Origin: Epithemia pelagica
Lineage: Eukaryota > Protista > Bacillariophyta
Assembly (NCBI GenBank): GCA_946965045.2
Contig: OX337239.1
Span: 3,241,233 to 3,305,232 of the forward strand
Reading direction: 5' to 3'
Length of the DNA: 64,000 bases
The translations under genes and the position numbers were made by a program. The notes under the pieces are model-generated. The model did not search any database. It saw only the letters and a list, made by a program, of their open reading frames with translations, and was not told the DNA's origin. Positions 761 through 59,272 of this stretch are shown piece by piece (positions within the stretch are counted from its first letter, which is position 1; every line of letters starts with the position of its first letter).

Positions 761-1945
761 ATGACAACGACACTGAAAGAACAAGCATGGCAGTCGGGCC
801 TTGTCCTGTTAGACGAGACACATGAATGGAATTTCGAGGACTGGCCTCCTCTTGAGGGTGAATGGCGTTCTCGTCATGCTTCGGTCGTACTGAATCATCC
901 CGATAACAACCAAGAACAAACCGTCGTCGTGTTGGGTGGATATCGAACAGGTCAATGCGAGCTCGATTCGGTTCTTACATTGAATCTATCACACCCCAGC
1001 AAGCAGTGGCGAGAAGGACCATCCATGGACAAGACACGTGCTGGACATGCCGCTGTTGTTTGCAATGGCGGCGTGTACGTGATGGGAGGATACAGTCGAG
1101 GACTTTTGGATTGTATTGAACGAATCGATGCCAATGATTTGCTTCGATCATCCTTTACAACCACCACCACACAGGATAGTTATTGGACAACATTGACATG
1201 TCGATTATCAACGGGACGAGTGGGATGTTGTGCTGTTGCCGTGCACAACCGATACATCGTTGTAATGGGTGGACGCAGCAATCGTTATTGGTCGTCGGTG
1301 GATATTGTTGATACCAGCAATCACACTCTCATTGAGGGACCATCTATGACTGTTCCTCGATCATACTTTGACAGCGCAGTCGTTGGACACCGCATCTTTG
1401 TCGTTGGAGGCCGAAACGATGACAATGTACTTGATTCGGTGGAGTATTTGGACTTTGCAGAGGAGAGAAAAGACGACTCTTTGACGACAGTCATTTCCTT
1501 CTCGTCCGCTTGGACCACTCACTCTGAATTGGTGCTTTCCAACCCTCGAGCTTTTTGTGCAATGGTAGCCGTGGGATCTTGTCTGGTGGTGGCGGGAGGA
1601 CGAGGCAATTTAAGTGTGGAAGTCTTGGATACGCACCGCAACCGTGTGTGGAATCTCCCTGGACTGCAAGAAGATCGTTGGGGCTGCAGTATGGTGTCTG
1701 TTCCCAATCAAGTTGCCGTGATTGGTGGATGGCGCACTACTTCCTGTGCGACATTGCCACTAATGGATAGGAATTCGTGGTGCTTTCGTCGACTCTGTGA
1801 GCAGCAATCGAACGGATGGTATGATTCTCTTGAAGGTATGGGTATCCGAGATGATGATATTTCTCCCTTCTCCACCTCGACATCAGCTCATAAACGAACA
1901 AAGCCCGATACACGCCGTGGTGATGAAGGCAAGGATGGAACTTGA
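761..1945 (+). CDS. Stand-alone Kelch-repeat beta-propeller protein, array copy 1
   Basis: ORF 692..1945; conserved family start MTTTLKEQAWQSGLVL at ATG 761. Six Kelch motifs with GG doublets (VVLGGY, YVMGGY, VVMGGR, FVVGGR, VVAGGR, AVIGGW) and downstream Y/W (QWREGPSM, YWTTL, VWNLP). No BTB, F-box or signal peptide seen. Confidence 0.92.
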   Translation: MTTTLKEQAWQSGLVLLDETHEWNFEDWPPLEGEWRSRHASVVLNHPDNNQEQTVVVLGGYRTGQCELDSVLTLNLSHPSKQWREGPSMDKTRAGHAAVVCNGGVYVMGGYSRGLLDCIERIDANDLLRSSFTTTTTQDSYWTTLTCRLSTGRVGCCAVAVHNRYIVVMGGRSNRYWSSVDIVDTSNHTLIEGPSMTVPRSYFDSAVVGHRIFVVGGRNDDNVLDSVEYLDFAEERKDDSLTTVISFSSAWTTHSELVLSNPRAFCAMVAVGSCLVVAGGRGNLSVEVLDTHRNRVWNLPGLQEDRWGCSMVSVPNQVAVIGGWRTTSCATLPLMDRNSWCFRRLCEQQSNGWYDSLEGMGIRDDDISPFSTSTSAHKRTKPDTRRGDEGKDGT

Positions 1946-4916
1946 AATTTGCAACGTATTGCATGTATGTCCCAACAATAGCGGAACTATAGCATTATCA
2001 TTTTTTCTCAAACTGCAGTTTGATTGTTTTCTTCATGGCATTGCGACCTAAAGAGATATCACATACACCTTTGTACTAGTAGAAGACGAAAGTTACACCA
2101 TCCGGCATGACACTGCAAACAGGAGTGGAGCCAGGCCTTGGGTAGATGGCCATGGTACCATGCCTCTCTGCTGTTGATGGGGTCGAGTAATCATGCTGTG
2201 GAAGATTATGGTTACGTGCCTGAAACACTAGGCGTAGCGACTCGTTTAGACGGTCGTCTTCATTCCGACCATGCGTTCAATTGTGAGGTCCGGTCCTTCT
2301 ATGGCGAATGCCTGCGTGAGAGGACAGTACCCCGTCTCTCGACGTTTGTGGTTTCGGGTGACAGGACATTTGTGAATCGTTGGAATTTGTGACACCGACG
2401 TGTTCGATATTTTCTCCAATATTGCAACTATACTTTATCATGAGGTCAGCAATTTGCTTGCGTCGAACCAGCAATCAGTCTCTCCGAAGTGGCTCGTTGA
2501 CAGTCCATGGGTATCGGTCCTCGTAGGAAGACTTGAAAGGGCGATGCGACCCTTTCAAATAATCAATTCTTCACTACTCCAATCGGACGCGTCGGGAGGG
2601 AGTTAAATCGCGTTCCATACTTAAATCCGTAGTACTGCACTCCTCGTCACCGGCGCAACTACTCTCTTGGTCCGACTTTGAGCATTTGTTGCAAACATGA
2701 CGCTGCCATTCATAGCTGTCCTCATATCCACCAGCCAAGGTTGGGCAGTGGAATGCTCCTCCACTCTTTTGTCTTGGTTGTAGATCATCCTGGATGCAAG
2801 TTGTATGACATTTGCTGTAAAGCTAGATACTTTTTTCGAGCCTCCACATCTTTATGTACCTCCAATGGGGCGACTTTGTGATCGATTCAGCAGGTCCTCA
2901 TGGTGTCATGTTGAGAAAGGGTCCAAAATAATTGGCGTCTAGACTGCCATGCAGTGCCACAACACAAAGAGATTTATCTGGTCTTGTTGCTGGCGTCAAT
3001 CCTGATTTACTAGTTGGTCAGTACTGGAGGAGGATTCTCGTTCCAAGAAAGACATGTGGATCAGGAAGCATAACATTGTCCTAGTGCTCTTCTTTTGCTG
3101 TTGTTGTTGTTGTTGTTGTTTGTTACACTAGACCTCCTGTTGCGAATCGAAAGCCAAGGTACGATTTCTAGCTTGTTGCGATGAAAGTTGTCGTTGAGTA
3201 TTAGAGTCTTCTTTTGAGTCTTCCTCCACGGGAGACATGAGAGCGAGTCACAGCAGAAAACGCTGCCAGAAGGCGCGAAAAGGTCAATCTCCGAAACCAA
3301 AGACGGCGACGACGGCGACAGACACATTGTGGTGCTTGCTGATGGTATCTTTTTGTCGTTCGTTTCAATGGATATTCCCCCAAACTGATGTGGAGTCCCC
3401 CTCCCCCAAAGTCTGTGAGTCCCTTCCAAATCTTGGTCGCGGAATGAGGACATGAATGGCTCGCAGGCGCGCCGACCGAGACGAGCAGTGTTACTCTAAA
3501 ATATCGATTGATGTCGTCGCCAAAAAACGACCACTCTAATAGAATCTACTGCTACACTCAATGGGAAACAAGGCATCTAGCATCTACGGTATCATCCCAA
3601 CGGCAACGGCGTTCGATCCACGGCCATGGCGGCCAAAGAATGATCATCCCAATTGGCAGTCTAAACTCATGGCAGGTATTCCTTGGGAAACATCCAACCA
3701 CACTCCCACTGGCGCAACAGATGGACCCATGACATGCATTGCGCAACCTGCCGGTGCTTTTTGTAAAAGACGCCTAGCCAGGTTGCCAAGGTCAACAGTT
3801 TACAAGCACCGTACCATGCCATGTCAGCAGCAAGTGGCCTTGGCCTTTTGATCCGTTGTATTACTGGGGTTCTTCGCGAGAGACACCACGACCCATGGCA
3901 AAAATTGCAGGATGACAAAACTGACCTGAGCCAGTACCATGACAGCGACCGGTACCCGTCATGACCATCGACCAGCAGGATGGAACAACAAGAGCAGTAC
4001 CAACAACAACAGCTCGGTCGACGAAACAACAACAGCTCGGTCGAACCAAGTTCCTTCCCAGACGAGACTCGCATCACTTCCCAGGTCTCCATCCACGACC
4101 AGTACACAGTGCCGTTGCTTTTTCGTCGACTCGGTATTTGTTGATGGGAACCAACAACCAGACACACTGTGGAGTATTCATTGCATGGTTGGATATTCCA
4201 TGGCACTGTGATTTGGGATGATTGAAAAATGCCAACCAGATCACGACTATACTCTACTCCACCGCCCATTTCAAGTGACATCAGCAACAACCACAAAAGA
4301 TCTGAAACGAATCCACACCACATTCATTGCTCTTACGTGTATTCCCGGCTGATGCTTCAAGGTCTGCAGCAACTGGATTGTCCTTTTACGTCATCTTTCG
4401 TATTGTTCGGTACTAGAAGGACTCTTCTTGTCTTCACCAGAAATGATCCACTCGGTTCCCAAAGTCACATGGTGGCCACCTTTTCTTGTTGGCACCCACC
4501 AGCACATTGCTGATTTCTGCTCTCTAGGGATTGGAAACAAGCCTTGGTTGCAGGCAAGGAGCATCCTGCCATTCGCAGAAAAACATGCCCTATCGGTATA
4601 CTGCTAGTGTTCCCAAGGGCGTTTGGCAGAGCTCGGACATTGGCGGAAACTAGAGACGACGGAATGACGAACATGTCAGTAAGCAGTGCAACCGCAATTA
4701 TGGGTATAGCAGCGGCGGCAAGGATGCCGAAACGATGACAATCTGGCTACGGTCACGATTTGTCTCGTGCCGAAAGCTCCTGTCCATCCATTTCGTCAAG
4801 TCAGTCGTGCTTCCAGTCCGCACCCATCACAATCACAACAGCAGAGCAAACCTACCTGCCTCTTACAAGACAGTGTCTCGATCATCATAAATTCTGTAGT
4901 CGAAACGTTTGCAACC

Positions 4917-6116
4917 ATGACCACAACACTGAAAGAACAAGCATGGCTGTCAGGCCTTGTCCTTTCCGACAAGACACCCGAGTGGAATTTCGAGGACTTG
5001 CCTCCGCTTGAGGGTGGATGGCGAGAGTATCATACATCGGTCGTGCTAAATCATCTCGGTGCGGACAACAACAGACAAACCATTGTCGTGTTGGGTGGAT
5101 ACCGAGCAGGTCAAGGCGAGCTCGATTCAGTTCTTGTACTGAATTTAGCAGACCCAAAGAAGCAGTGGCGAGAAGGGCCATCCATGAACAAGGCACGTTA
5201 TAAACATGCTGCTGTTGTGTGCAATAGAGGGGTCTACGTGATGGGAGGATACACTAATAGATATTCAAGTTTGGATTGTATCGAACAAATTAATGCCACC
5301 GATTTGCTCCAACCATCTTCGACATCAAGCAGCTCGAAGAAGAGCCATTGGACGACATTGACATGCCGGTTATCAGTGGAACGATCAGGATGTTGTGCTG
5401 TTGCGGTTCACAACCGATACATCGTTGTAATGGGTGGCAATAACAACGATGGTTATTTGTCGTCAGTGGATATCATTGATACCAACAATCACACTGTCAC
5501 TGTGGGACCAAGCATGACTGTTCCACGACAATCGTGTGCCAGTGCAATCGTTGGTCACCGCATCTTTGTCGTTGGAGGTCATAACGATAATGGCCATCTT
5601 TACTCGGTGGAGTATTTGGACTATGCAACACCCTGTGACAAGGATGCAACAAAAAAGGAGATAGGCTCGACATTCATTTCTTTCTCGTCCACCTGGATCA
5701 CTCATCCTGAGTTGGTGCTTTCCAATGCACGATTATCTTGTGCAATGGTTGCGATGGGATCCTGTCTGGTTGTGACGGGAGGATTCGAATCATCTGTGGA
5801 AGTGTTGGATACGCGCCGCAACCGTGTGTGGAATCTCCCACCATTCACTAACTACCACAATGGTTGTACTATGGTGACTGTTGCCAATCAAGTTGCCGTG
5901 ATTGGTGGATGGCGCAATCCTACCTGTGTGACATTGCCACTAATGGATAGGAATTCGTGGTGTTTTCGTCGACTTTGTGAGCAGCAATCGAACGGATGGT
6001 ATCATTCTCTTGAAGGTATAGGTATCCGAGATGCTGATATCTTGACATTGGCATCAGCACGTCAACGCGCAAGGTCCAATACTCAAAGTGGTGATGAAGG
6101 GGCGGATGAAGCCTAG
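4917..6116 (+). CDS. Kelch-repeat protein, array copy 2 (possible in-frame N-terminal extension from ~4767)
   Basis: ORF 4767..6116, family ATG at 4917. Same six GG-containing repeats; basic tail RQRARSN. Confidence 0.92.
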   Translation: MTTTLKEQAWLSGLVLSDKTPEWNFEDLPPLEGGWREYHTSVVLNHLGADNNRQTIVVLGGYRAGQGELDSVLVLNLADPKKQWREGPSMNKARYKHAAVVCNRGVYVMGGYTNRYSSLDCIEQINATDLLQPSSTSSSSKKSHWTTLTCRLSVERSGCCAVAVHNRYIVVMGGNNNDGYLSSVDIIDTNNHTVTVGPSMTVPRQSCASAIVGHRIFVVGGHNDNGHLYSVEYLDYATPCDKDATKKEIGSTFISFSSTWITHPELVLSNARLSCAMVAMGSCLVVTGGFESSVEVLDTRRNRVWNLPPFTNYHNGCTMVTVANQVAVIGGWRNPTCVTLPLMDRNSWCFRRLCEQQSNGWYHSLEGIGIRDADILTLASARQRARSNTQSGDEGADEA

Positions 6117-10359: not shown

Positions 10360-12374
10360 ACAATGACCAGTATGTACTAAAAGGCAAGGATGAAACTTGA
10401 AATGGGCAACATATTGCACTGATGTCCTGCAAAAGGGGATACATTATATAGTGTAATCTTTTTGTTCTGAAACTATTGCTCTAGTGTTTGCATGGCATTG
10501 CAAACTATTGAGATATTCATGTACCATCGGTGTAGTAGAAATGAGATTGTGTGACACAGCGTACGGCAGGGAACGTGATTTCTCGAAACGACGAAAGCCA
10601 TGGATTATCGAGAGCTTTGCTTTGTGTTGAGTGTTTCTGTCGTCGTGGCCCTTGTTTTGCCAGCCCCTAGGGATTATGCACATGAAGCGGTCGCTTCTTT
10701 TGGCTGGACTCCAAACTTCGATAAGAGTCACAAACTTATCACTCTGACTGTAAGAATAAAATTTGTTCTATTCTCTGACGGAGCGACGATTATCCCCGTA
10801 TTTGCCTGGACTGTAAAAGGACGTTGGGATTTGCCATGTGTCCGACTATAAAGTCAAGAGCAATCACAGGACAATCTTCGCACACCCCTTCAATCACGGT
10901 ATGGGGATCGAAACGACCCACCCTCTCCACTTCATGTTCCTGAAATTCTTGTTTCAAATCTTTTGGAATCAATCCCAAGTACCAATAGTGACCTTCGCAA
11001 ACTTGAGCAATCGAACCCGATACTGACTACTTGGCATTTGGTGAAGGTTCTTGGATATTACGTGTCTACCAAGGATTGCACATGCCAGCAATAATGGAAA
11101 AACGGAGACGATGCACGACGACGTTCCACAGAGATGCCTTGCACTGGTACCGACGGGAGGACAAACATTTGTTGTCTAACCATCCAAGTGACATTTCAAG
11201 CAGTCGATGATGACTCATCGTCAATCATTGGATTGAAGACGATTCGACAGAGGACGAGCCATGGGCAAAGATGCGGACAACATTGAGAAAAGAGAGATTT
11301 GTCGTTTCCCAATGAGAGAATGAGTCGAGGCCTCGTCTGCGGCCTGCTTGGCCATCGTCAACATCCGTTGTTGCAGTTGAAGCAAGGTAAGGTTGGTACA
11401 GCATGTCGATCGGCCGGTATACACCAACTCGCCATTCCGACAAGAAAGGTTCCATCGCTTCGCGAAGCAACCGATGCAGCACGGATTATATGGCGTAACC
11501 GATGAGACAACAATTGTATGGCTTGTCTATGACTCGTGAGAAACGTCTTGCACTGGTCCGCCAGGTTACGAGCCCAAATTGAGGTGCCCATCCATATTGC
11601 CAGTGCCACGGCTCAAGAATTCAGAACGGCAATGGCACGGAGCAGCCACCATCCACCATAGGCCATAGGGTATCATTGGCAAGAGTGACTCCCCATCGAG
11701 AGTTTTCGCATCTTTTGGCGGATCTTTGCTCTCAGTAGATTGGAGAGATTCGCATTCGAACTTGCCGGTCCATGCAAACTCTCATGCTCCACCACCATTC
11801 GTCCTTTCATGTTGGGACTGATCCTGGGCCTCGCCATTCAATTGTCACGGATTGAAGGAGGCCACTTCATGGTTGTTGTCCTCAATCATCGCTTCTTGAA
11901 GAGACATGTTGGTAAAATTGATTGATAAGGTCAAGTCGTCGTCGTCCTCATCATCGCCGTCATCATCGTCGATAATAGTCCCCAGCGGCAACGGGGGTGA
12001 GGAGTGGGGTCGCATGTGTGTCGTGCTTTTGATGTTCACACTTCAGACTACTCATTCACTAATCCTCATGACTCACCCCCGCGGTGGGTTTTTGTACATC
12101 CAAAAAGCCTGTACTTACAATCCTTAGGCTATCTCCACCCGAGCGCCGCTATGCTGACGTATTCGAGCTTTCTGATTGGCCTCGCTATCCGGATAGCGGG
12201 TTAGCGGAGCCAAGAGGAAATGAACTCCACGATCTCCGTTATACAATAGTGCCGCTATTGATAAGGCATTTGCAAATTCACATATGCCCTATCTTGTTTC
12301 GGTTAAAGAATGAGAGGGGAGAGGAGTCATCAAACAATAGTCAGCAAGAACAGACCAAAGTTTGCTCAAAAAAG

Positions 12375-13709
12375 ATGGAGGACTCGTTGGATGAACTGTT
12401 GGAGCTGCTCCAACAGGAGGCAGATGTTGACATTGGTGTAGCTTCTACAGTTGCATCTGACCTCCTGGAACAACATACTAGCACCCAACATGGTGGTTCG
12501 CCTAAAGGAAAGGCACCAAACAAGAGTCGTGACTTTGACGAAGCGTACAAGCGATTGGTGCGCAATTACTTTGATGGAGAAAACTCCATCTACGACGAGG
12601 CAGACTTTGAGCGTCGGTTCCGATTACCCCGCGCAGTTTTCAATCAGATATACAACCAACTTTATGGTAGTGGTTGCTTCACGCAACATTACATGCTTGA
12701 TGGACGTCCTGGGATCAACCCACTTGTGCGTCTTGTGGCTTGCTTTCGGAAGATTGCTTATGGAGATGCTGATGACAGGGAAGATGAAAATCTTTGCTTG
12801 TCTGAGTCGGTCTTACATGAATCCTTTGAGCAATTCTTATCCCTTATCAAACAACATTTTGCCAAAGACTATTTAAATCGCCAACCTTCGTCTTCGGAAA
12901 AGGAGCACGCGTTGAAGAAAAATGCTGCTCGTAACTTCCCAGGTTGCTTTGCGTCATGGGATTGCAAGCATTTCAATTGGGAAAACTGTCCTAAAGCTTG
13001 GGAAGGGCAAGTCCGTGGAAAGGAGGGTGTCACCACTCTTGTATTGGAAGCAATTTGTGATCCTGACTTGTACATTTGGTTTTTCTTTTTTGGGCAACCA
13101 GGGACTTTGAACGACATAAACATTCTGGATAAGAGTTCCATAGTTGGCGCAATGGTGAATGGCTCCTTTGATTTTTCATGTCCCGCTCCATACAAGATAG
13201 GACCAAATTGGAGAGACTACATGTACTTCTTGGTGGATGGTATCTATCCAGACTGGTCCATTTTCATTGATTCCTGTCAGGGCTCTGATGAAGAAAAGCT
13301 CAAGTATTTTTCATCATGTCAAGAAGCCGTCCGTAAAGACATTGAACGCTGTTTTGGTGTTCTGGTTAAGAGGTTCCATATTCTCAAGCGACCTCTGCGG
13401 TTCTGGACCCGATCAAAAATTGGAGATGTGTTGGATTGTTGTATTATCCTACACAACATGTGTGTCGAGCATGGACGTGGCACGGATCCGATGGATGTCG
13501 ATAGCGAAAACATGGCGTTCAATGCCGAGACAGATGAAGTCGTGTCGTTGTTTGGTGCACCAGCCGAGGAAGTTGGTGCTGTCGGAGGAAGTGGAATTCA
13601 AGCCATTCTCCAGCATGCTCATTTGCAGGAGAATATCCAGGACTCGCAACAAAAAATATCCCTAAAAGGCGACCTGATTGAACATGCATGGTCTAAACGT
13701 AACGGGTAG
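12375..13709 (+). CDS. Harbinger DDE transposase
   Basis: Motifs FERRFRLPR, SWDCKHFNWENCP, NDINILDKS, YFLVDGIYP and RKDIERCFGVL (D-D-E triad candidates). The first ATG inside the TIR-bounded element is 12375. Confidence 0.9.
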   Translation: MEDSLDELLELLQQEADVDIGVASTVASDLLEQHTSTQHGGSPKGKAPNKSRDFDEAYKRLVRNYFDGENSIYDEADFERRFRLPRAVFNQIYNQLYGSGCFTQHYMLDGRPGINPLVRLVACFRKIAYGDADDREDENLCLSESVLHESFEQFLSLIKQHFAKDYLNRQPSSSEKEHALKKNAARNFPGCFASWDCKHFNWENCPKAWEGQVRGKEGVTTLVLEAICDPDLYIWFFFFGQPGTLNDINILDKSSIVGAMVNGSFDFSCPAPYKIGPNWRDYMYFLVDGIYPDWSIFIDSCQGSDEEKLKYFSSCQEAVRKDIERCFGVLVKRFHILKRPLRFWTRSKIGDVLDCCIILHNMCVEHGRGTDPMDVDSENMAFNAETDEVVSLFGAPAEEVGAVGGSGIQAILQHAHLQENIQDSQQKISLKGDLIEHAWSKRNG

Positions 13710-13717
13710 GTTAATCA

Positions 13718-17058: not shown

Positions 17059-18258
17059 ATGACCACAACACTGAAAGAACAAGCATGGCAGTCGAGCCTT
17101 GTCTTATCGGACGACAAAGCAGAATGGAATGAGAACGATTGGCCTTCTCTCGAGGGTGGATGGCGTGACGAACATGCTACGGTCGTACTTGATCACCCCG
17201 ATGAAGACGACAATAACAAGAACAACGGACAAACTGTAGTCGTGCTGGGCGGATATCAACAAGACCAAGGTACCATAGATTCCGTTCTGTTATTAAATCT
17301 GGCAGATCCAGTCAAGCAGTGGCGAGAAGGGCCATCCATGAACAAGGCACGTTATGGACATGCTGCTCTTGCGTGCAATGGAGGGGTCTACGTGATGGGA
17401 GGATACAATGGAGCATACTTGGCTTGTATGGAACGAATTGATGCCAATGATTTACTGCAATCATGGTTAACATCAAGCACAACACATGCGAGTAATTGGA
17501 CGAGATTAAGCTGTCGATTATCAACGGGACGAAAGGGATGTTGTGCTTTTGCGGTTCAAAACCGGTACATCGTTGTAATGGGTGGATGCAACGGTCATTA
17601 TTTGTCGTCGGTGGATATTATTGATACAAGGAACCACACTGTTACTGAGGGACCAAGCATGACTATTCCTCGATCATTTTGTGCCTGTGCGGTCATTGGC
17701 CACCGCATCTTTGTCGTTGGAGGCCGAAACGGTGACAACGAACTTGATTCGGTGGAGTATTTGGGCTTTGCAGAGGAAAGAAAAGACGACTCTTTGTCTA
17801 CAATCATTTCCTTCTCGTCCGCTTGGACCACTCACTCTGAATTGGTGCTTTCCAACCCTCGAGCTTATTGTGCAATGGTTGCCGTGGGATCTTGTCTGGT
17901 GGTGGTGGGAGGATGGGTCGATTCAACCGTGGAAGTCTTGGATACGAACCGTAACCGCGTGTGGAATCTCCCACCATTCGTGGTTTACCGCAGTAGTTGC
18001 AGTATGGTGACTGTTGCCAATCAAATTGCCGTGTTTGGTGGATCTCAGAACCCTACCTGTGCCACAGTTTTACTACTGGACAAGCATACTTGGTGTTTTC
18101 GTCGACTTTGTGAGCAGCAATCGAACGGGTGGTATCATTCTCTTGAAGGTATAGGTATCCGAGATGCTGATATCTCACCCTTCTTGACATTGGCATCAGC
18201 ACGTAAACGCGCAAGGTCCAATACTCAAAGTGGTGGTGAAGGGGCGGATGAAGCCTAG
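17059..18258 (+). CDS. Kelch-repeat protein, array copy 4 (possible in-frame N-terminal extension from ~16777)
   Basis: ORF 16777..18258, family ATG 17059. Six repeats; tail RKRARSN. Confidence 0.92.
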   Translation: MTTTLKEQAWQSSLVLSDDKAEWNENDWPSLEGGWRDEHATVVLDHPDEDDNNKNNGQTVVVLGGYQQDQGTIDSVLLLNLADPVKQWREGPSMNKARYGHAALACNGGVYVMGGYNGAYLACMERIDANDLLQSWLTSSTTHASNWTRLSCRLSTGRKGCCAFAVQNRYIVVMGGCNGHYLSSVDIIDTRNHTVTEGPSMTIPRSFCACAVIGHRIFVVGGRNGDNELDSVEYLGFAEERKDDSLSTIISFSSAWTTHSELVLSNPRAYCAMVAVGSCLVVVGGWVDSTVEVLDTNRNRVWNLPPFVVYRSSCSMVTVANQIAVFGGSQNPTCATVLLLDKHTWCFRRLCEQQSNGWYHSLEGIGIRDADISPFLTLASARKRARSNTQSGGEGADEA

Positions 18259-21245: not shown

Positions 21246-21488
21246 TGTTGAAACTCAAACAAGCCGTGCCGTAAAAGCAACTCTTTATAGGCTTATCGAA
21301 CTACGTAATCTCCTTAGAATGAACACTTGCTTGTTCATCTTGCCTAATGTTGCTTTTGCCACGTCGACGGACTAAAGTCCATGCTTCGGCATCTTCATCA
21401 TTCAAGTTTGGATCCTTTGCTTCCGAATCACTCTCTTTAGTCGCGGCTTGTTCGCTGCTACTCGTCGCCCGGTCACATATCCTCAACA
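21246..21488 (-). repeat. 3' LTR of the Copia element
   Basis: TG..CA termini; direct repeat of 27079-27306; preceded on the minus strand by purine-rich AAAGGAGTG (candidate PPT). Confidence 0.95.
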
Positions 21489-23050
21489 CACTCCTTTGGG
21501 CCGAGGAGTGATACTTACTACTCGGGACCACATTCATGATGATATCCCGCAGGCGATAAAAAGCTTGACCCTGCAACGGTTTTGTAAAGAAATCAGCGAT
21601 CATCTCATCAGTCGGACAGAAACGCACACTCACGTCCTTTCGGCGAATACAATCTGTGATATAGAAATATCGTAGATTGATGTGTTTGGTTCTCTTTGAG
21701 CTCGATAACCGACCGTTTCTTTCCAGTAGGATACTGCTCTGATTGTCCTGGTGCAGGACAACGTTCTTTACTTCATGTCCTTGGGCTCTCAGAAAGTTCT
21801 GGCTCCATAACATTGACGGTAACACGTCGTGCACGCCTATCAACTCACATTCGGTTGAACTTCGCGCCACAAGTTTTTGTTTTGATGAGGCCGTCATGAC
21901 GGCACCCTTGCCCATAGTCATTACTCCGCCGGTCTGTCCTTTCATGTCTGAGTGAGTAGCGAAGGAGGCATCCACCCACCAACAGAGTGTTCCAGATCCA
22001 TCACCCTCTAGTCGTAGGATCAGATCCTTGGTTGATTGTAGGTACTTGAGAACCCGACCGAGCTTTCTCTGATCATCAACGTCTGGATTCATGACACGAG
22101 TGCTAAAAAAGGCCACAGCAGTGCGTATATCTGGCCGTCCTCTTTGCGCCATGTACGCTAACTGCATTGTTACACTATGGAATCGATCTGCCTCCTCCTC
22201 ATTGAGTTTTTGAGCGTTCGGGTCCGTATGATATAGATGCTTAGCAGCGGGTGACCGTGCTTTACCGATCCATTCTTTTGGTAGCGAGATCAAAATGGTG
22301 TCCAGGTAGGATCTCATGTCCACCTGCACAACCCCATCCTCTCCATAGTCTAAGAACATGCCCAAATAGTCGTGCCTTGTTCCTTCCGACACGGAGATTT
22401 CTCCCAACTGTCCAAACTCTGCTTTGAGTTCGCCCTTCTCATATGTTAGATAAGGGGCATATGCTTCATAATCGACTTCTAGGAGTAGCTCAGCCATTAG
22501 TCCAGTAAGCCGCATATACACGCCAGGATCCATGTCCGAGTGCATAAACGCACCTGGGATGTCTGCCACAGCAACCACACGTCGTTCCAGGGCATCAATG
22601 ACGGCAGTGATGAATACAGAATCGGTGGCCACGGTAGGAGAAGCTGAATCTTCCTTGTCTATGTACGCACGTTGTTTGCGCCCGTCGGCACAGCCTCGTC
22701 CTTTTATCTTGCCACACCGTTTTCGTTTCAAAAACATTAGGTAACCTAGTGCTTGTTGCACCTCATTCCAGCTGAGGTCAGTTTTGTGTACTGCCCTCAA
22801 TACTCCTCTATCATGCAATTGTTGGATTTCCACCTTCACGGCGGCCACTCCCTTGTTTCCAAACAGTTTGATGCCCTTCTTCATAGGCATCTGCGGTGTG
22901 GCTTGATTCACCTCACTCGCTACAAGAAACAACACTCCATCTCGAAGGATTCCATCATAGCGCCCTCCTTTTAGAGTATCGATGCAGGCAAACGAGTGCC
23001 CGTATCGGTGCGCGTAGCTCCTTTCACGGTTTGGCCGTAGATTGTATCTG

Positions 23051-23120
<70 letters not shown>

Positions 23121-23190: not shown

Positions 23191-23204
23191 CTCCTCTCCA
23201 CCGG

Positions 23205-26324: not shown

Positions 26325-26325
26325 C

Positions 26326-27018: not shown

Positions 27019-27064
27019 ATAGCGTAGTTCCCTTCACAGTCTGTGATGAGATATAATGCTTTAT

Positions 27065-39085: not shown

Positions 39086-39154
39086 TGCACTTAGCCCCTC
39101 GGTGGAACCAGCCCGAGATGAGGACTCGGCCCGGCCCGGCCCGGGGCATCAGAA

Positions 39155-43196: not shown

Positions 43197-44402
43197 ATGA
43201 CAACGACACTGAACGAACAAGCATGGCAGTCGGGCCTTGCCCTGTTAGACGAGACACCTGAATGGAATTTCGAGGACTGGCCTCCTCTTGTGGGTGGATG
43301 GCGTGCAGGTCATAGTTCGGTCGTACTGAATCATCTCGATACGGAAAACGAGACCAACAACAGGGGGCAGACGGTCGTCGTGTTGGGAGGATATCAACAA
43401 GGCCAAGGCGATGTCAATTCCGTTCTGCTATTGAATCTGGCAGACCCAAACAAGCAGTGGCGAGAAGGGCCACCCATGAACCAGAAGCGTGATGGACATG
43501 CCACTGTTGTGTTCAACGGTGGCGTCTACGTGATGGGAGGTCGCAATACAACATCTTTGGATTGTCTGGAACGAATTGACTTGAATGATTTGTTTCAATC
43601 ATCTTTGACAACAAGTAGCACACGTGCGAGCCATTGGACGACATTGACATGTCGGTTATCATCTGGACGACATGGGTGTTGTGCTGTCGCGGTTCACAAC
43701 CGATACATCGTTGTAATGGGTGGATACAGCGATCGTTATTTGTCGTCGGTGGATATTATAGATACAAACAGCCACACTGTCATTGCCGGACCAAGCATGA
43801 TTGTTCCACGACAATGGTTTGCCAGTGCGGTCATTGGTCACCGCATCTTTCTCGTTGGAGGTCATAACGATGAGCATGGCTGTCTTTACACGGTGGAGTA
43901 TTTGGACTTCGCAACACCCTGTGGCAATGATGAGACAAAAAAGGAGACTGGTTCTACATTCATTTCTTTCTCACCCACCTGGACCACTCATTCGGAGTTG
44001 AGGCTTTCCAATGCACGAAGTCCTTGTGCAATGGTTCCCGTGGGATCTTGTCTGGTGGTGGCGGGAGGATGGAGAAATTCAACCGTGGAAGTTTTGGATA
44101 CGCACCGCAACCGTGTGTGGAATCTCCCTGGACTGCAAGAAGATCGTTGGGGCTGCAGTATGGTGTCTGTTGCCAATCAAGTTGCCGTGATTGGTGGATG
44201 GCGCACTACTTCGTGTGCGACATTGCCACTTCTGGATAGAAATTCATGGTGTTTTCATCGTCTCTGTGAGCAGCAACCGAACGGATGGTATCATTCTCTT
44301 GAAGGTAAGGGTATCCGAGATGCTGATGTCTCACCCTCCTGCACATTGACATCAGCTCGTAAACGGGCAAGGCCCAATACACGCCGTTGTGATAAAGACT
44401 AG
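43197..44402 (+). CDS. Kelch-repeat protein, array copy 7
   Basis: ORF 43131..44402, ATG 43197. Six repeats; tail RKRARP. Confidence 0.92.
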   Translation: MTTTLNEQAWQSGLALLDETPEWNFEDWPPLVGGWRAGHSSVVLNHLDTENETNNRGQTVVVLGGYQQGQGDVNSVLLLNLADPNKQWREGPPMNQKRDGHATVVFNGGVYVMGGRNTTSLDCLERIDLNDLFQSSLTTSSTRASHWTTLTCRLSSGRHGCCAVAVHNRYIVVMGGYSDRYLSSVDIIDTNSHTVIAGPSMIVPRQWFASAVIGHRIFLVGGHNDEHGCLYTVEYLDFATPCGNDETKKETGSTFISFSPTWTTHSELRLSNARSPCAMVPVGSCLVVAGGWRNSTVEVLDTHRNRVWNLPGLQEDRWGCSMVSVANQVAVIGGWRTTSCATLPLLDRNSWCFHRLCEQQPNGWYHSLEGKGIRDADVSPSCTLTSARKRARPNTRRCDKD

Positions 44403-47716: not shown

Positions 47717-48883
47717 ATGACAACAACACTGAAAGAACAAGCATGGCAGTCGGGCCTTGTCTTGTTGAACAAGACACCAGAATGGAATGAAGACGACTGG
47801 CCTCCTCTTGAGGGTGGATGGCGTTCGCTTCATGCTACGGTCGTACTCCATCATCCCAATAAGAACGACGACAACAACAACAGGCGACAAACGGTCGTCG
47901 TGATGGGAGGACGTCAACAAGGCAAAGGTACCACGGATTCCGTTCTTGTATTGAATCTATCAGACCCAGACAAGCAATGGCAACAAGGACCGCCTATGAA
48001 CAAGAAACGTGACGAACATGCCGCTGTTGTTTGCAATGGCGGCGTCTACGCGATGGGAGGATACGATGAAGGTTCGTTTGATTCTATCGAACGAATCGAT
48101 GCCGATGACATGCTGCATTCATCTTTGACATCAAGCACCACACGTGCGAGTAATTGGAAGAGATTAACCTGTCGATTATCAACGGGACGAGTGGGATGTT
48201 GTACTGTTGCGGTGCAAAACCGATATATCGTTGTAATGGGTGGCTATTACAGCAATCGTTATTTGTCGTCGGTGGATATAATTGATGCCAACAATCACAT
48301 TGTCACTGCTGGACCATCTATGACTGTTTCTCGATCATATTTTGGCAGCGCAGTCGTTGGCCACCGCATCTTTGTCATTGGAGGCCGTAACAATAATGGC
48401 AATCTTGACTCGCTGGAATATTTGGACTATGCAACACCCTTTGACAGTGATGAGACAAAAAACGAGATCGGCTCTACTTTCATATCTTCCTCCACTTGGA
48501 TCACTCATTCTGATTTGGTGCTTTCCAGTGCACGAAGCCCTTGTGCAATGGTTGCCGTGGGATCCTGTCTGGTTGTGGCGGGAGGAGGATGGCACAATTC
48601 AACCATGGAAGTCTTGGATACGCACCACAACTGCGTTTGGAATCTCCCACAATTCGGAAAGTACCGTGTTGGCTGCAATATGGTGCCTGTTGCCAATGAA
48701 GTTGCCGTGATTGGTGGATGGCGCAATCCTTCCTGTGTGACATTGCCACTGATGGACAAGAATACATGGTGCTTTCGTCGACTCTGTGAGCAGCCTCGGA
48801 ACGAATGGCACGAGTTTCGGGAAGGAATGGGTATCCGAAATAACCAAGGACCACGTGAAGCCCAACACATGTCATTACGATAA
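47717..48883 (+). CDS. Kelch-repeat protein, array copy 8
   Basis: ORF 47549..48883, ATG 47717. Six repeats; divergent tail. Confidence 0.9.
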   Translation: MTTTLKEQAWQSGLVLLNKTPEWNEDDWPPLEGGWRSLHATVVLHHPNKNDDNNNRRQTVVVMGGRQQGKGTTDSVLVLNLSDPDKQWQQGPPMNKKRDEHAAVVCNGGVYAMGGYDEGSFDSIERIDADDMLHSSLTSSTTRASNWKRLTCRLSTGRVGCCTVAVQNRYIVVMGGYYSNRYLSSVDIIDANNHIVTAGPSMTVSRSYFGSAVVGHRIFVIGGRNNNGNLDSLEYLDYATPFDSDETKNEIGSTFISSSTWITHSDLVLSSARSPCAMVAVGSCLVVAGGGWHNSTMEVLDTHHNCVWNLPQFGKYRVGCNMVPVANEVAVIGGWRNPSCVTLPLMDKNTWCFRRLCEQPRNEWHEFREGMGIRNNQGPREAQHMSLR

Positions 48884-51787: not shown

Positions 51788-52980
51788 ATGAGCATGACAC
51801 TGAAAGAACAAGCATGGCAGTCGGATCTTGTCCTTTTGGAAGAGACACCTGAATGGAATTTCGAGGACTGGCCTCCTCTTTTAAGATGGCGAGAGCGTCA
51901 TGCTACCGTTGTACTTGATCATCCCGATAAGGACATCAACGACAACAACCCGATGAGACAAACGGTCGTCGTGATGGAAGTTGGCAACCAGGTCAAACTA
52001 CCACAGATTCCGTTCTGTTATTAAATATGGCAGAATCCAACAAGCAGTGGCGAGAAGGGCCACCCATGAACACGAAACGTTGTGGACATGCCGCTGTTGT
52101 GTGCAATGGGAGAGTCTACGTGATGGGAGGATGCAATAGAGTACGACGATATTTGGATTGTATCGAACAAATAGATGCCAATGATGTGCTGCAATCATCT
52201 TTGACATCAAGCAGCACACGTGCGAGTAATTGGACGACATTGACATGTCGCTTATCAACGAGACGATCAGGATGTGGTGCTGTTGCGGTTCACAACCGAT
52301 ACATCGTTGTACTGGGTGGCTATTACAACCATCGCTATTTGTCGTCGGTGGATATTATTGATACCAAAAATCACATTGTCACTGCTGGACCATCCATGAC
52401 TGTGAGCCGACGATTTTGTGCCAGTGCGGTCGTTGGTCACCGCATCTATGTCGTTGGAGGTTTTAACACGGGCGGCAATCTTGACTCGGTGGAGTATTTG
52501 GACTTCGAAAGGCCATGGCATACTGAAAAGACAAAGAAGGACACGGCTACCACATTGATTCCCTTCTCATCCACTTGGATCACTCATCCTGATTTGGTGC
52601 TTTCCAATGCACGAAGGTCTTGTGCGATGGTTGCCGTGGGATCTTGTCTGGTTGTGGCGGGAGGATGGCACAATTCAACCGTGGAAGTCTTGGATACGCA
52701 CCGCAACCGCGTGTGGAATCTTCCACCATTAGATAATCACCGCGAAGGCTGCAGTCTAGTGACTGTTGCCAATCAAGTTGCCGTGATTGGTGGATATCCC
52801 AATCCTTCATGTGCAACATTACCACTACTGGATAGAAAATCATGGTGTTTTCGACAACTCTGTGAGCAGCCTCGGAAGGAATGGTATTATTGTCTAGAAA
52901 GATCGGGTCACGGAGATGTCAATGAAATATCTTGGGCCATGTCGACATCCACTCTTAAACGATTAAGGACCAATACATGA
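51788..52980 (+). pseudogene. Kelch-repeat gene, copy 9, frameshifted in blade 1
   Basis: N-part in ORF 51518..52024 (ATG 51788), remainder in ORF 52027..52980. An apparent 1-bp deletion near 51975 (GTGATGGAAGT versus the GTGATGGGAGG pattern of paralogs) shifts frame. An assembly error is possible. Confidence 0.8.
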
Positions 52981-55094: not shown

Positions 55095-56234
55095 ATGACA
55101 ACGACACTGAAAGAACAAGCATGGCAGTCGGGCCTTGTCCTGTTACAAGACGAGACACCGGAATGGAATTCCGAGGACTGGCCTCCTCTTGCGGGTGGAT
55201 GGCGTTATCGTCATGCTTCGGTCGTACTGAATCATACCGATAACAACCAAGAACAAACGGTCGTCGTGTTGGGCGGATATCAACCGGGGCTAGGCGAGCT
55301 CGATTCCATTCATGTATTAAACTTGGCAGAATCAAACAAGCAGTGGCGAGAAGGGCCACGCATGAACCAGAAACGTGATGGACATGCCGCTGTGGTGTGC
55401 AATGGCGGCATTTACGTGATGGGAGGAGACACTGGAGCACCTTTGGATTGCATGGAACGAATCGACGCCAATGATTTGCTGCAATCATCTTTGACAACCA
55501 GCATCACACACGAGATGAACTGGACGACATTGACATGCCGGTTATCAACGCCACGATGGGGATGTGGTGCTGTCGCGGTTCACAACCGATACATCGTTGT
55601 AATGGGTGGCTACAACGATCGTTATTTGTCGTCGGTGGATATTATTGATACCAGGAACCACACTGTCTCTCTGGGACCATCCATGAATGTTCCCCGATTT
55701 TTTTGTGCCAGTGCGGTCATTGGACACCGCATCTTTGTCGTTGGAGGTTGGAACGAGCATTGTCGTGTTGACAAGGTGGAGTATTTGTACTATACAACAA
55801 CCTGTGACAGTGATGTGACAAAAAAGGAGATAGGCTTGACATTCATTTCTTTCTCACCCACCTGGACCACTCATTTGGAGTTGAGGCTTTCCAATGCACG
55901 AAGATCTTGTGCAGTGGTTGCCGTGGGATCTTGTCTGGTGGTGGCGGGACGACCCAGTCGAACCGTGGAAGTGTTGGATACGCACCGCAACCGCGTGTGG
56001 AACCTCCCACCATTCGGAAATGACCGCATTGGCTGCAGTATGGTGTCTGTTGCCAATCAAGTTACCGTGATTGGTGGATATCGCAATCCTTCCTGTGCAA
56101 CATTACCACTACTGGATAGGAATTCGTGGTGTTATCGACGACTCTGTGAGCAGCAACCGAACGGATGGCATCATTCTCTTGAAGGTGTGGGTATCCGAGA
56201 CGATGATATCTCACCCTTCTTCACCTCGGCATGA
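55095..56234 (+). CDS. Kelch-repeat protein, array copy 10 (tail truncated by TCA>TGA)
   Basis: ORF 54987..56234, ATG 55095. Full propeller. The stop TGA at 56232 corresponds to TCA in paralogs and precedes the ARKRARP-coding sequence. Confidence 0.88.
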   Translation: MTTTLKEQAWQSGLVLLQDETPEWNSEDWPPLAGGWRYRHASVVLNHTDNNQEQTVVVLGGYQPGLGELDSIHVLNLAESNKQWREGPRMNQKRDGHAAVVCNGGIYVMGGDTGAPLDCMERIDANDLLQSSLTTSITHEMNWTTLTCRLSTPRWGCGAVAVHNRYIVVMGGYNDRYLSSVDIIDTRNHTVSLGPSMNVPRFFCASAVIGHRIFVVGGWNEHCRVDKVEYLYYTTTCDSDVTKKEIGLTFISFSPTWTTHLELRLSNARRSCAVVAVGSCLVVAGRPSRTVEVLDTHRNRVWNLPPFGNDRIGCSMVSVANQVTVIGGYRNPSCATLPLLDRNSWCYRRLCEQQPNGWHHSLEGVGIRDDDISPFFTSA

Positions 56235-58051: not shown

Positions 58052-59272
58052 ATGACAACGCCACTGAACGAACAAGCATGGCAGTCGGGCCTTGTCCTGT
58101 TAGACGAGACACCTGAATGGAATACTGACGATTGTCCTCCTCTTGAGGGTGGATGGCGCATACATCATGCTTCGGTCGTACTCGATCATCTCGATACGGA
58201 AAACGATAGCAACAACAGGGGGCAGACGGTCGTCATGTTGGGAGGATATCAACAAGGCCAAGGTATCACGGATTCAGTTCTTGTATTGAATCTAGTAGAC
58301 TCTTACAAGCAGTGGCGAGAAGGGCCATCCATGAACAAGAAACGTTCTGGACATGCCGCAGTTGTGTGCAATGGCGGCGTCTACGTCATGGGTGGGAGCA
58401 ATGCAGGTTCAAGTTTTGATCATATCGAACAAATTGATTCCAATGATTTGCTGCATTCATCTACAACCAAAAGCAACACACATGAGAGTCATTGGACGAC
58501 ATTGACATGTCGTTTATCAGTGGAACGATTTGGATGTTGTGCTGTTGCGGTTCACAACCGATACATCGTTGTAATGGGTGGCTGTTCCAACGATCGCTAC
58601 TTGTCGTCGGTGGATATTATAGATACAAACAATTACACTGTCACTGCGGGGCCAAGCATGACTGTTCCACGACGAGGGTGTTCCAGTGCGGTCATTGGAC
58701 ACCGCATCTTTGTCGTTGGAGGCCGTAATGAACATGGCTATGTTGACTCGCTGGAGTATTTGGACTTCGAAAGGCCATGTGAAAGTGATGAGACAGAAAA
58801 GGAAACTGGCTCGACGTTCATTTCTTTCTCACCCACCTGGACCACCCATTCGGAATTGATGCTTTCAAATGGACGAAGTTCTTGTGCAGTGGTTACCGTG
58901 GGATCTTGTCTGGTGGTGGTGGGAGGACGAGGCAATTTACGTGTGGAAGTCTTCGATACACACCACAACCGCGTGTGGAATCTCCCACCATTCGGAAATC
59001 ACCGTGAGGACTGCAGTACGGTGACTGTTGCCAATAAGGTTGCCGTGATAAGTGGCTGGGGAAGTCCTACCTGTGCGACATTACCACTACTGGACAAGCA
59101 TACGTGGTGTTTTCAACGACTCTTTGACCAGCAGTTCAACATATGGTGTCTATTTCGGGAAGGAAGGAATATCCAACATGCTGATAACTCGCCTTTCCCC
59201 ACCTGGACATCAGATCGTAAACGAGCAAGGCCCCACACGCACCGTGGTGATGAAGGGAAGGATGGAACTTGA
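58052..59272 (+). CDS. Kelch-repeat protein, array copy 11
   Basis: ORF 57908..59272, ATG 58052. Six repeats; last ~85 aa nearly identical to copy 6. Confidence 0.92.
   Translation: MTTPLNEQAWQSGLVLLDETPEWNTDDCPPLEGGWRIHHASVVLDHLDTENDSNNRGQTVVMLGGYQQGQGITDSVLVLNLVDSYKQWREGPSMNKKRSGHAAVVCNGGVYVMGGSNAGSSFDHIEQIDSNDLLHSSTTKSNTHESHWTTLTCRLSVERFGCCAVAVHNRYIVVMGGCSNDRYLSSVDIIDTNNYTVTAGPSMTVPRRGCSSAVIGHRIFVVGGRNEHGYVDSLEYLDFERPCESDETEKETGSTFISFSPTWTTHSELMLSNGRSSCAVVTVGSCLVVVGGRGNLRVEVFDTHHNRVWNLPPFGNHREDCSTVTVANKVAVISGWGSPTCATLPLLDKHTWCFQRLFDQQFNIWCLFREGRNIQHADNSPFPTWTSDRKRARPHTHRGDEGKDGT

What the first reader, a model, noticed from the sequence alone, without database searches (positions are those of the whole stretch)
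761..59272. Subtelomeric repertoire of 11 stand-alone Kelch propellers, hypervariable on the predicted ligand-binding face
Seen: the scaffold is conserved (MTTTLKEQAWQSGLVL, QWREGPxM, WTTLTCRLS, NRYIVVMGG, VGSCLVVAGG, VWNLP), while two positions per blade vary in almost every copy. The R-X-X site before strand a reads WRSRH/WREYH/WRWFH/WRDEH/WRYRH/WRIHH, RAGH/RYKH/RGHH/RRGH/RDEH/RCGH, RVGC/RSGC/RRGC/RKGC/RHGC/RWGC/RFGC and RSYF/RQSC/RQYC/RQWF/RFFC/RRGC. The loop after GG also varies in length and sequence (GGYSRGLL, GGYTNRYSSL, GGRNTTSL, GGCNRVRRYL, GGDTGAPL). Nine of 11 copies keep an open frame while spacer ORFs have all decayed. Established: the d-a and b-c loops form the substrate-binding face of Kelch propellers, and subtelomeres host fast-evolving contingency families. 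Inference: this is a diversified intracellular recognition repertoire (defence against viruses or parasites, or allorecognition), with no BTB or F-box adaptor. I know of no description of such a system in diatoms.
Basis: partly seen in the sequence, partly recalled or inferred. Interest (0 to 1): 0.82.

Follow-up and report, generated by a model that had tools for sequence, protein, structure and literature searches.

The report
Hypervariable stand-alone Kelch gene family, diatom
A chromosome end of a pennate diatom carries 11 copies of a family of at least about 200 small Kelch propeller proteins whose predicted ligand-binding loops are under strong diversifying selection and are shuffled between copies, which makes the family a candidate intracellular recognition (possibly immune) repertoire not yet described in diatoms.

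Summary
The window holds 11 head-to-tail copies of a ~400-aa six-bladed Kelch gene. Nine are open and two have a single frameshift each. The array ends 4.3 kb from a TTAGGG telomere array.

Variation is concentrated in two loops per blade, D-A and B-C. These loops form the substrate-binding face in solved Kelch complexes. My codon site models give 6-13% of sites with omega 2.7-4.7 (M1a/M2a LRT 121, M7/M8 LRT 123). The result holds with segment-specific trees, with only the intact copies, and with 8 copies from other contigs. All 16 sites with posterior >0.9 lie in those loops. Strands have dN/dS 0.31, so the genes are maintained.

Copies also exchange segments: exact 218- and 241-nt tracts occur in copies otherwise ~20-25% diverged.

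At least ~220 distinct proteins occur, wherever checked in one ENA assembly of a raphid pennate diatom. They include internal arrays, some interleaved with LRR-TIR genes, so "subtelomeric" describes only this locus.

No BTB, F-box or BC box was found. Function is untested; I favour a diversified intracellular binder repertoire, probably for non-self.

The parts
761..1945 (+). K1, intact Kelch gene (394 aa)
   Evidence: AlphaFold2 model pLDDT 88.8: six blades, C-terminal helix 337-359 and a disordered tail.
4917..6116 (+). K2, intact (399 aa); identical to database protein P0040
9208..10359 (+). K3, intact propeller with a short C-tail (383 aa)
17059..18258 (+). K4, intact (399 aa)
27498..28716 (+). 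K5, pseudogene or very recent frameshift. A 29-nt deletion near 27642; otherwise open.
31074..32294 (+). K6, open (406 aa) but lacks 5 residues of blade-1 strand A. It carries conversion tracts 31516-31733 (identical to K7) and 32061-32301 (identical to K11).
43197..44402 (+). K7, intact (401 aa); identical to P0073. Tract 43633-43850 is identical to K6.
47717..48883 (+). K8, intact propeller with a short divergent tail (388 aa)
51788..52980 (+). K9, pseudogene or very recent frameshift. A 1-nt deletion near 51979, at the blade-1 GG; otherwise open.
55095..56234 (+). K10, intact propeller with an early stop in the C-tail (379 aa). Homology continues to 56285.
58052..59272 (+). K11, intact (406 aa), the copy nearest the telomere. 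Tract 59039-59279 is identical to K6.
563..760 (+). Example of the conserved non-coding upstream block (promoter or 5'UTR, class A). Class A precedes K1, K3, K5, K6, K7, K10 and K11; class B precedes K2, K4, K8 and K9. Indels are not multiples of three and there are in-frame stops, so this is not an upstream exon.
12084..13709 (+). PIF/Harbinger-type transposase ORF (541 aa) in a spacer
   Evidence: Plant_tran 2e-61, DDE_Tnp_4
21301..26324 (-). Copia-like retroelement ORFs (629 + 1039 aa)
   Evidence: RVT_2, a weak hit below Pfam's cut-off
33695..39085 (-). Non-LTR (LINE) element ORF of 1796 aa, with endonuclease and reverse transcriptase domains, inside a 57% GC block at about 33-42 kb
63535..64000 (+). 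Telomere array, (TTAGGG) x 77

Best explanation
The window samples one telomere-adjacent array of a lineage-specific family with at least ~220 members. Each member is a ~400-aa protein with no signal peptide. It consists of an N-terminal strand that closes the ring, six Kelch blades, a conserved C-terminal helix, and a disordered basic tail.

Shown:
- The scaffold is under purifying selection.
- About 20 residues in the D-A and B-C loops, all on one face of the propeller, are under diversifying selection.
- Copies multiply in head-to-tail arrays, and about a fifth decay.
- Copies exchange blade-sized segments by gene conversion, which recombines loop sets.

Inferred:
- Each paralogue binds a different ligand on that face, so the family works as a germline-encoded repertoire of intracellular binders.
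- The ligands evolve fast, and are most likely proteins of viruses, parasites or mobile elements.
- The invariant C-terminal helix and tail link every member to one common downstream partner, such as an unidentified ligase or signalling component.
For: Copies and Kelch identity.

Fold: the AlphaFold2 model has six blades and pLDDT 88.8. The best Foldseek matches are the Kelch domains of KLHL12, KEAP1, KLHL20, KLHL3 and NS1-BP, many solved with peptides bound on the same face.

Selection:
- M0 omega is 0.64, and my lnL equals IQ-TREE's.
- M1a/M2a LRT 121, with 7% of sites at omega 4.1.
- M7/M8 LRT 123.
- Four segments, each with its own tree, give LRT 16.6-25.2.
- The 9 intact copies alone give LRT 101.5.
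- Eight copies from four other contigs give LRT 61.5 with largely the same sites.
- All 16 sites with posterior >0.9 lie in D-A or B-C loops (16/136 versus 0/187, Fisher 6e-7).
- A tree-free NG86 estimate gives dN/dS 1.5 for the a-priori R+1/R+2 sites, against 0.31 for strands.
- The same sites peak in entropy across 119 paralogues (>3 bits against a mean of 0.94) and in a set of 83 further paralogues gathered with a 46%-identical member as query.

ORF retention is incompatible with neutrality.

Gene conversion: 7 pairs have tracts with global p <= 0.022, and there are exact 218- and 241-nt tracts.

Family size and spread.

LRR-TIR genes lie inside two other arrays.
Against: - There is no functional, expression or localisation evidence of any kind.
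- No effector or adaptor domain was identified, so the output step is pure inference.
- The site models are my own implementation, with branch lengths fixed up to a scale factor. Recombination and multi-nucleotide changes can inflate such tests, although the partitioned and replicate analyses agree.
- The loop-to-face assignment uses DSSP topology, not 3D coordinates.
- LRR-TIR neighbours were seen in only 2 of the 7 fetched loci outside the window (one of the 7 spans only 5 kb) and not in the window.
- The arrays lie in TE-rich DNA, which also fits selfish or drift-driven expansion.
Confidence: 0.55

Rival explanations
1. The proteins are ordinary ubiquitin-ligase substrate receptors. They dock to a cullin-type ligase through a non-canonical motif in the conserved C-terminal helix, as KLHDC2/3/10 do with a C-terminal BC box. 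They target endogenous or foreign proteins for degradation. This overlaps with the best explanation, because it could be its output arm.
For: The architecture is Kelch-only with a conserved C-terminal helix. The Pfam hit to the KLHDC2/KLHL20/DRC7 Kelch domain is above its cut-off. Large adaptor families with positively selected substrate-binding parts are known in plants and nematodes (my own knowledge).
Against: No BTB, BACK or F-box was found in the proteins, in longer relatives, or in spacer ORFs of at least 150 aa. A BC-box-like pattern occurs in only 3 of 119 C-termini. KLHDC2 is not among the listed sequence or fold matches.
Confidence: 0.2
2. The family is a conspecific recognition system, for example sexual compatibility or allorecognition between clones of a heterothallic pennate diatom, rather than pathogen recognition.
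For: The signature is the same as in the fungal het-d/het-e WD-repeat genes: positive selection on the propeller interaction face plus exchange of repeats (PMC1805685). Diversifying selection is shown here.
Against: The proteins have no signal peptide or membrane segment, so they cannot meet a partner cell's surface. Hundreds of paralogues per genome fit a repertoire better than a few polymorphic loci. No strain data are available.
Confidence: 0.08
3. The expansion has no organism-level recognition role. It reflects selfish or TE-linked amplification, or genomic drift of a duplicating array in TE-rich, recombination-prone DNA.
For: The arrays are embedded in Copia, LINE, Harbinger and Crypton-like elements. 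About 5 of 22 copies examined are disrupted. The copies form a star-like tree at about 69% median identity.
Against: Purifying selection acts on strands (dN/dS 0.31) and ORFs are retained against the neutral expectation. Omega exceeds 1 only at one structural face in all six blades. The duplicated unit is a gene plus about 150-270 nt upstream and up to ~500 nt downstream. Upstream homology starts at different points and falls into two classes rather than ending at shared termini; terminal repeats were not searched for directly. Singletons also sit among housekeeping genes.
Confidence: 0.12
4. The array is a dead pseudogene cluster, and the apparent hypervariability is decay.
For: Two of 11 copies are frameshifted, one has lost part of a strand, and one has a truncated tail.
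Against: Nine of 11 copies are open, against an expectation of at most 1% under neutrality. Strand dN/dS is 0.31. Variation is periodic and face-specific.
Confidence: 0.02

Closest known systems
Fungal HET-D/HET-E (NWD/HNWD) genes: STAND/NLR-type proteins with hypervariable WD40 propellers (Podospora anserina; PMC1805685, PMC2873952)
   Same: A beta-propeller is the specificity module. A few positions per repeat on the protein-interaction face are under positive diversifying selection. Repeat or segment exchange occurs between paralogues. Pseudogenes are present in the family.
   Different: The fungal genes use WD40, not Kelch. The fungal proteins carry a NACHT domain and an N-terminal effector domain; these diatom proteins have nothing but the propeller and a short tail. 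In fungi the exchange is of highly similar repeats within and between about 10 genes. Here the copies are ~69% identical, there are hundreds of them, and tracts of 50-240 nt are exchanged.
BTB-BACK-Kelch (KLHL: KEAP1, KLHL12, KLHL20, KLHL3) Cullin-3 substrate adaptors
   Same: A six-bladed Kelch propeller (TM-score normalised to the target 0.74-0.83). The hypervariable loops correspond to the D-A and B-C loops that hold substrate peptides in solved complexes.
   Different: There is no BTB or BACK domain. Sequence identity is about 20%. KLHL genes are conserved single-copy genes, not a hypervariable array.
Plant F-box-Kelch and nematode F-box/MATH-BTB adaptor superfamilies (my own knowledge; F-box evolution papers)
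   Same: They are large, lineage-specific, tandemly duplicated families that evolve by birth and death, with positive selection in the substrate-binding domain. They have been proposed to target pathogen proteins.
   Different: Those families are defined by an F-box or BTB link to a ligase. None is detectable here.
KLHDC2/KLHDC3/KLHDC10: Kelch-only receptors of Cullin-2 ligases (my own knowledge)
   Same: A Kelch propeller with no N-terminal adaptor domain, followed by a C-terminal helical segment. Pfam PF24681 scores above its cut-off.
   Different: There is no conserved BC-box pattern (3/119). KLHDC2 is not among the listed best sequence or fold matches. KLHDC genes are not expanded or hypervariable.
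Subtelomeric contingency families of parasites and yeasts (var, VSG, and similar)
   Same: This array abuts a telomere. Ectopic gene conversion occurs between copies, and pseudogene copies are present.
   Different: Those families encode surface antigens, whereas these proteins are intracellular. This family is not confined to subtelomeres. Expression control is unknown.

Membership tests
Kelch-repeat beta-propeller superfamily | Repeated Kelch motifs (GG doublet, conserved Y/W/R) recognised by Kelch profile HMMs | tested here: met
   Kelch_1 E 2.6e-27 to 1e-35, 3-4 stretches, plus Kelch_6, Kelch_2 and PF24681 above their cut-offs. The six GG and six R-x-x sites are aligned.
Kelch-repeat beta-propeller superfamily | A closed six-bladed propeller fold of four-stranded blades | tested here: met
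   AlphaFold2 pLDDT 88.8, pTM 0.85, 24 strands arranged in 6 blades, with N-terminal strand 14-16 completing blade 6. Foldseek to solved Kelch domains gives E 1e-15 to 1e-17.
BTB-BACK-Kelch (KLHL) adaptors | N-terminal BTB and BACK domains | tested here: not met
   No BTB or BACK hit in 3 window copies, 10 longer relatives or 20 spacer ORFs. The sequence upstream of the conserved ATG is non-coding. A small upstream exon further than 400 nt away cannot be formally excluded.
F-box-Kelch proteins | N-terminal F-box | tested here: not met
   Same searches as for BTB. The protein starts 13 residues before the first strand.
KLHDC2/3/10-type Cullin-2 receptors | C-terminal BC box ([APST]-L-x3-[CSA]-x3-[AILV]) and Cul2 box | tested here: not met
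   The pattern occurs in only 3 of 119 C-terminal regions. This is a pattern test only; binding was not tested.
NLR / STAND receptors with propeller sensor (HET-E type) | Central NACHT or NB-ARC NTPase domain | tested here: not met
   No such domain in any Pfam scan.
NLR / STAND receptors with propeller sensor (HET-E type) | Positive selection at interaction-face positions of the propeller, and exchange of repeat segments | tested here: met
Subtelomeric contingency gene family | Family members confined to, or strongly enriched at, chromosome ends | tested here: inconclusive
   This array ends 4.3 kb from the telomere. Four other loci with members of this subfamily lie 140-860 kb inside contigs, and two loci with more divergent relatives are also internal. 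Whole contigs could not be fetched, so enrichment was not measured.
Subtelomeric contingency gene family | Switching or mutually exclusive expression | not testable with these tools
   No transcript data for this organism are in the collections. All family hits come from the ENA assembly only.

The most novel reading that the evidence does not exclude
Diatoms possess a so far unrecognised kind of germline-encoded intracellular immune repertoire. It would consist of hundreds of stand-alone Kelch propellers whose hypervariable top faces bind proteins of viruses, parasites or mobile elements. They would signal or act through their invariant C-terminal helix and tail, perhaps together with the LRR-TIR genes that share their arrays. 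Diversity would be renewed by tandem duplication and blade-scale gene conversion.
Probability: 0.3. Interest if true: 0.9.

Novelty: new variant of a known kind. Interest (0 to 1): 0.74.

Why it matters
As far as I know, almost nothing is established about how diatoms, which are major marine primary producers, recognise viruses and parasites; this is my own assessment, not a tool result. A large family with the evolutionary signature of recognition receptors gives concrete candidate genes to test. That signature is purifying selection on the scaffold, omega well above 1 on the binding face, segmental shuffling, birth and death, and TIR-LRR neighbours.

It would also extend the principle of a hypervariable beta-propeller as specificity module from fungal NLRs to a Kelch-only protein in stramenopiles. 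Finally, it offers a natural library of Kelch binders on a single scaffold.

Tried and rejected
1. Upstream BTB/F-box exon. The 400 nt before each ATG are alignable only as non-coding blocks of two classes, with non-triplet indels and stops. Twenty spacer ORFs of at least 150 aa have no relevant Pfam domain.

2. Domain fusions in longer relatives. Only Kelch was found, apart from one distant Kelch-kinase.

3. C-terminal BC box. The pattern is absent.

4. Relatives in other organisms. All 20 cluster representatives checked, and all 240 listed hits of two searches, come from ENA only and carry no names. All 9 look-ups, 8 of them of Kelch family proteins, gave the same assembly, ERZ21939226. So I could not show the family in a second species.

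5. Literature. Four searches combining diatom, Kelch, subtelomeric and diversifying selection found no description.

6. Recombination as the cause of the LRT. I addressed this with segment-specific trees and a tree-free estimate.

7. Pseudogenes as the cause. I addressed this by dropping K5 and K9.

Not done:
- Mapping on 3D coordinates, because model files are not readable in scripts. DSSP topology was used instead.
- The metagenome scan, judged redundant with the protein collection.
- Species identification beyond 'closest named ZEP: Entomoneis paludosa, 89%'.

Full report
**1. What is in the window**

The window ends in 77 TTAGGG units at 63535-64000. tblastn with the first copy finds 11 copies of one gene, all on the + strand and so transcribed towards the telomere. 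They start at 761, 4917, 9208, 17059, 27498, 31074, 43197, 47717, 51788, 55095 and 58052. The last copy ends 4.3 kb from the telomere.

Amino-acid identity to copy 1 is 63-72%, which is lower than the nucleotide identity between copies of 75-83%. Pfam calls Kelch_1 and related models well above their cut-offs.

Nine copies are open from a conserved ATG (MTTTLKEQAW...). K5 has a 29-nt deletion near 27642 and K9 a 1-nt deletion near 51979. Once the frame is followed with N at the break, neither has any stop, so both lesions are recent or are assembly errors. K6 has lost five residues of a blade-1 strand in frame, and K10 stops early in the tail.

The statement that the spacer ORFs have all decayed is wrong. 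The spacers carry a PIF/Harbinger transposase (12084-13709), a Copia-like element (21301-26324) and a LINE with a 1796-aa ORF (33695-39085, in a 57% GC block).

**2. Organism and family size**

A zeaxanthin-epoxidase gene on another contig of the same assembly is 89% identical to a transcript of Entomoneis (Amphiprora) paludosa and 82-83% identical to Mayamaea and Seminavis proteins. The source is therefore a raphid pennate diatom; the species was not determined.

K2 maps the window to the end of contig ctg1237l (239,999 bp) of ENA assembly ERZ21939226.

A search with K4 returned 892 hits. The best 120 are all 59-78% identical and all come from ENA only, on about 20 large contigs. A search with a 46%-identical member returned about 100 further ENA-only proteins. 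That makes at least ~220 distinct proteins at the 90% clustering level, possibly including two haplotypes.

HMMER against 1.84 billion representatives found 137 clusters below 1e-30. All 20 clusters whose sources I looked up are ENA-only and unnamed.

**3. Genomic distribution**

The family is not restricted to chromosome ends. Head-to-tail arrays lie in three other places:
- at 177-199 kb of a 350-kb contig (L001)
- at 141-162 kb of a 451-kb contig (L004)
- at 810-832 kb of a 1.05-Mb contig (L005)

A single copy sits among housekeeping genes (VDE, ZEP, UDG) at 862-883 kb of a 1.68-Mb contig (L002). More divergent members, 42-47% identical, lie in gene-rich internal regions.

Most window copies have their nearest relative on another contig: K1 at 91%, K6 at 97% and K10 at 87%, against at most 78% within the window.

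About 5 of 22 complete copies examined are disrupted.

In two of the other arrays, LRR-TIR genes are interleaved with the Kelch genes (TIR_2 29.5 bits against a cut-off of 28, plus LRR_6).

**4. Architecture**

An AlphaFold2 model of K1, built on a 58-sequence family alignment, has pLDDT 88.8 and pTM 0.85. It shows a short N-terminal helix, a strand (14-16) that completes blade 6, six four-stranded blades, a helix at 337-359 and a disordered tail.

Foldseek matches solved Kelch domains of KLHL12, NS1-BP, KEAP1, KLHL20, KLHL3 and LZTR1, with TM-scores of 0.74-0.83 normalised to the target. The sequence search of the PDB agrees.

No BTB, BACK or F-box is found in any of these places:
- the window proteins
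- ten longer relatives, of which one distant relative is a Kelch-kinase
- twenty spacer ORFs

The 400 nt upstream of the ATGs align only as two classes of non-coding block, with non-triplet indels and stops. A BC-box-like pattern occurs in 3 of 119 C-termini, which I would expect by chance (no control was run). A KRAR-type basic motif occurs in 80 of 119 tails.

**5. Where the variation lies**

In the 11-copy alignment, and in 119 paralogues, variability is periodic. Two sites per blade stand out: the one or two residues after the conserved Arg that precedes strand A, and the residues after the GG doublet. Entropy exceeds 3 bits at K1 positions 37, 38, 67, 94, 154, 223, 307 and 325, against a mean of 0.94 bits.

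By the DSSP strand assignment, these are the D-A and B-C loops. In a four-stranded antiparallel blade, these two loops necessarily lie on the same face. That is the face that binds substrate peptides in KEAP1 and KLHL complexes (established knowledge; such complexes are among the hits).

The same sites are the most variable in a second set of 83 paralogues gathered with the 46%-identical query (mean 3.29 against 1.43 bits; Spearman 0.79 between the two entropy profiles).

**6. Selection**

I wrote codon site models with F3x4 frequencies, a fixed topology, and branch lengths from the IQ-TREE GY model that were free only up to a scale factor. My M0 likelihood equals IQ-TREE's (-8368.91).

| Test | Data | LRT | p | Positively selected class |
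|---|---|---|---|---|
| M1a vs M2a | 11 window copies | 121.4 | 4e-27 | 7% of sites, omega 4.1 |
| M7 vs M8 | 11 window copies | 123.4 | 2e-27 | 13% of sites, omega 2.7 |
| M1a vs M2a | four segments, own trees | 16.6-25.2 each | <= 2.5e-4 each | same sites |
| M1a vs M2a | 9 intact copies only | 101.5 | 9e-23 | 6% of sites, omega 4.7 |
| M1a vs M2a | 8 copies from four other contigs | 61.5 | 4.5e-14 | 7% of sites, omega 3.9, largely the same sites |

The segment-specific trees were used because recombination can mislead these tests.

All 16 sites with posterior >0.9 lie in D-A or B-C loops: 16 of 136 loop residues against 0 of 187 others (Fisher 6e-7).

A tree-free Nei-Gojobori estimate on site classes defined in advance from the Kelch motif gives these dN/dS values:

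| Site class | dN/dS |
|---|---|
| R+1, R+2 | 1.5 |
| GG+1 to GG+4 | 1.0 |
| Strands | 0.31 |
| Opposite-face loops | 0.41 |

Under neutrality at 0.1-0.2 substitutions per site, at most 1% of simulated copies stay open. The genes are therefore maintained, and one face is being diversified.

**7. Segmental exchange**

A permutation test on runs of identical polymorphic sites finds 7 pairs with global p <= 0.022. K6 and K7 share an exact 218-nt tract (31516-31733 = 43633-43850, blades 3-4). K6 and K11 share an exact 241-nt tract (32061-32301 = 59039-59279). Elsewhere these copies differ at about 20-25% of sites. Blade-sized cassettes, with their loops, are thus moved between copies.

**8. Interpretation**

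The shown parts are:
- a Kelch-only architecture
- a large, lineage-restricted family evolving by birth and death
- purifying selection on the scaffold
- positive selection on the canonical binding face
- gene conversion between copies

Together they point to a repertoire of intracellular binding proteins with many specificities.

The nature of the ligands is inference. It rests on analogy with fungal HET-D/E WD-repeat genes (PMC1805685) and with expanded ligase-adaptor families, and on the LRR-TIR neighbours. The output mechanism is unknown. The conserved C-terminal helix and tail is the obvious candidate for a common partner.

Rivals are a ligase-receptor role (which is compatible with the main reading), conspecific recognition, and selfish or drift expansion. 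A dead array is excluded.

**9. Novelty**

Four literature searches found no description of such a family in diatoms. The principle is known, but a Kelch-only, several-hundred-member version in a stramenopile is not. I rate it a new variant of a known kind.

**10. Limits**

- No expression data exist for this organism in the collections.
- The whole contigs could not be fetched, so telomere enrichment and total copy number are not measured.
- The site models are my own code, not PAML or HyPhy.
- The face assignment rests on topology rather than coordinates.

Noticed in passing
L005:13721-16685 (-) and L001:1-1106 (-): Genes encoding LRR plus TIR domains lie inside or beside Kelch arrays on two other contigs (TIR_2 29.5 bits, LRR_6). 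This may be an immune-type gene neighbourhood.
   Followed up: partly
window 33000-42000: A 57% GC block in a 48% GC background. It holds a LINE with an open 1796-aa endonuclease-RT ORF (33695-39085, -) and two further ORFs of 427 and 416 aa (39155-41719, -) with no Pfam match.
   Followed up: partly
window 12084-13709 (+); related spacer blocks at 11231-12128, 45123-46602, 49648-50726 and 60539-60967: An intact PIF/Harbinger-type transposase. Its upstream flank recurs in three other spacers without the transposase, possibly as non-autonomous derivatives.
   Followed up: no
window, about 130-190 nt upstream of each Kelch ATG (for example 563-760): There are two classes of conserved non-coding upstream block: class A for K1, K3, K5, K6, K7, K10 and K11, and class B for K2, K4, K8 and K9. 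Several class A blocks contain a short upstream ORF (MKSMCD*).
   Followed up: partly
window 31190-31240 (K6) and the same loop in other copies: AAC codon repeats give an Asn/Asp run of variable length in the blade-1 A-B loop, on the face opposite the hypervariable one. This is length variation by slippage rather than selection.
   Followed up: no
C-terminal 45 residues of the family (for example window 1880-1900 in K1): A KRAR-type basic motif is present in the disordered tail of 80 of 119 paralogues. It could be a nuclear localisation signal. K3, K8 and K10 lack it.
   Followed up: partly
window 14659-15080 and 23051-23121: A 141-nt unit is repeated three times at 96% identity. A (TGT)24 run lies inside the Copia-like ORF.
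   Followed up: no
window 61000-63535: The last 2.5 kb before the telomere is unique within the window and has a strong GC skew (+0.22). It holds ORFs of 194-340 aa with no Pfam match.
   Followed up: no
L004:18427-20525 (+): ORFs with an NDC10_II domain, as in Crypton-type tyrosine-recombinase elements, lie next to a Kelch array.
   Followed up: no
P0264 (647 aa; source not looked up): A distant relative fuses a Kelch propeller to a C-terminal protein kinase domain. It is the only fusion seen among the longer relatives.
   Followed up: no
L003 versus the window: Mapping K2 to the ENA record places the window end about 440 nt beyond the record's first base. The window therefore comes from a version of the contig with a longer telomere tract than the stored record.
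   Followed up: no
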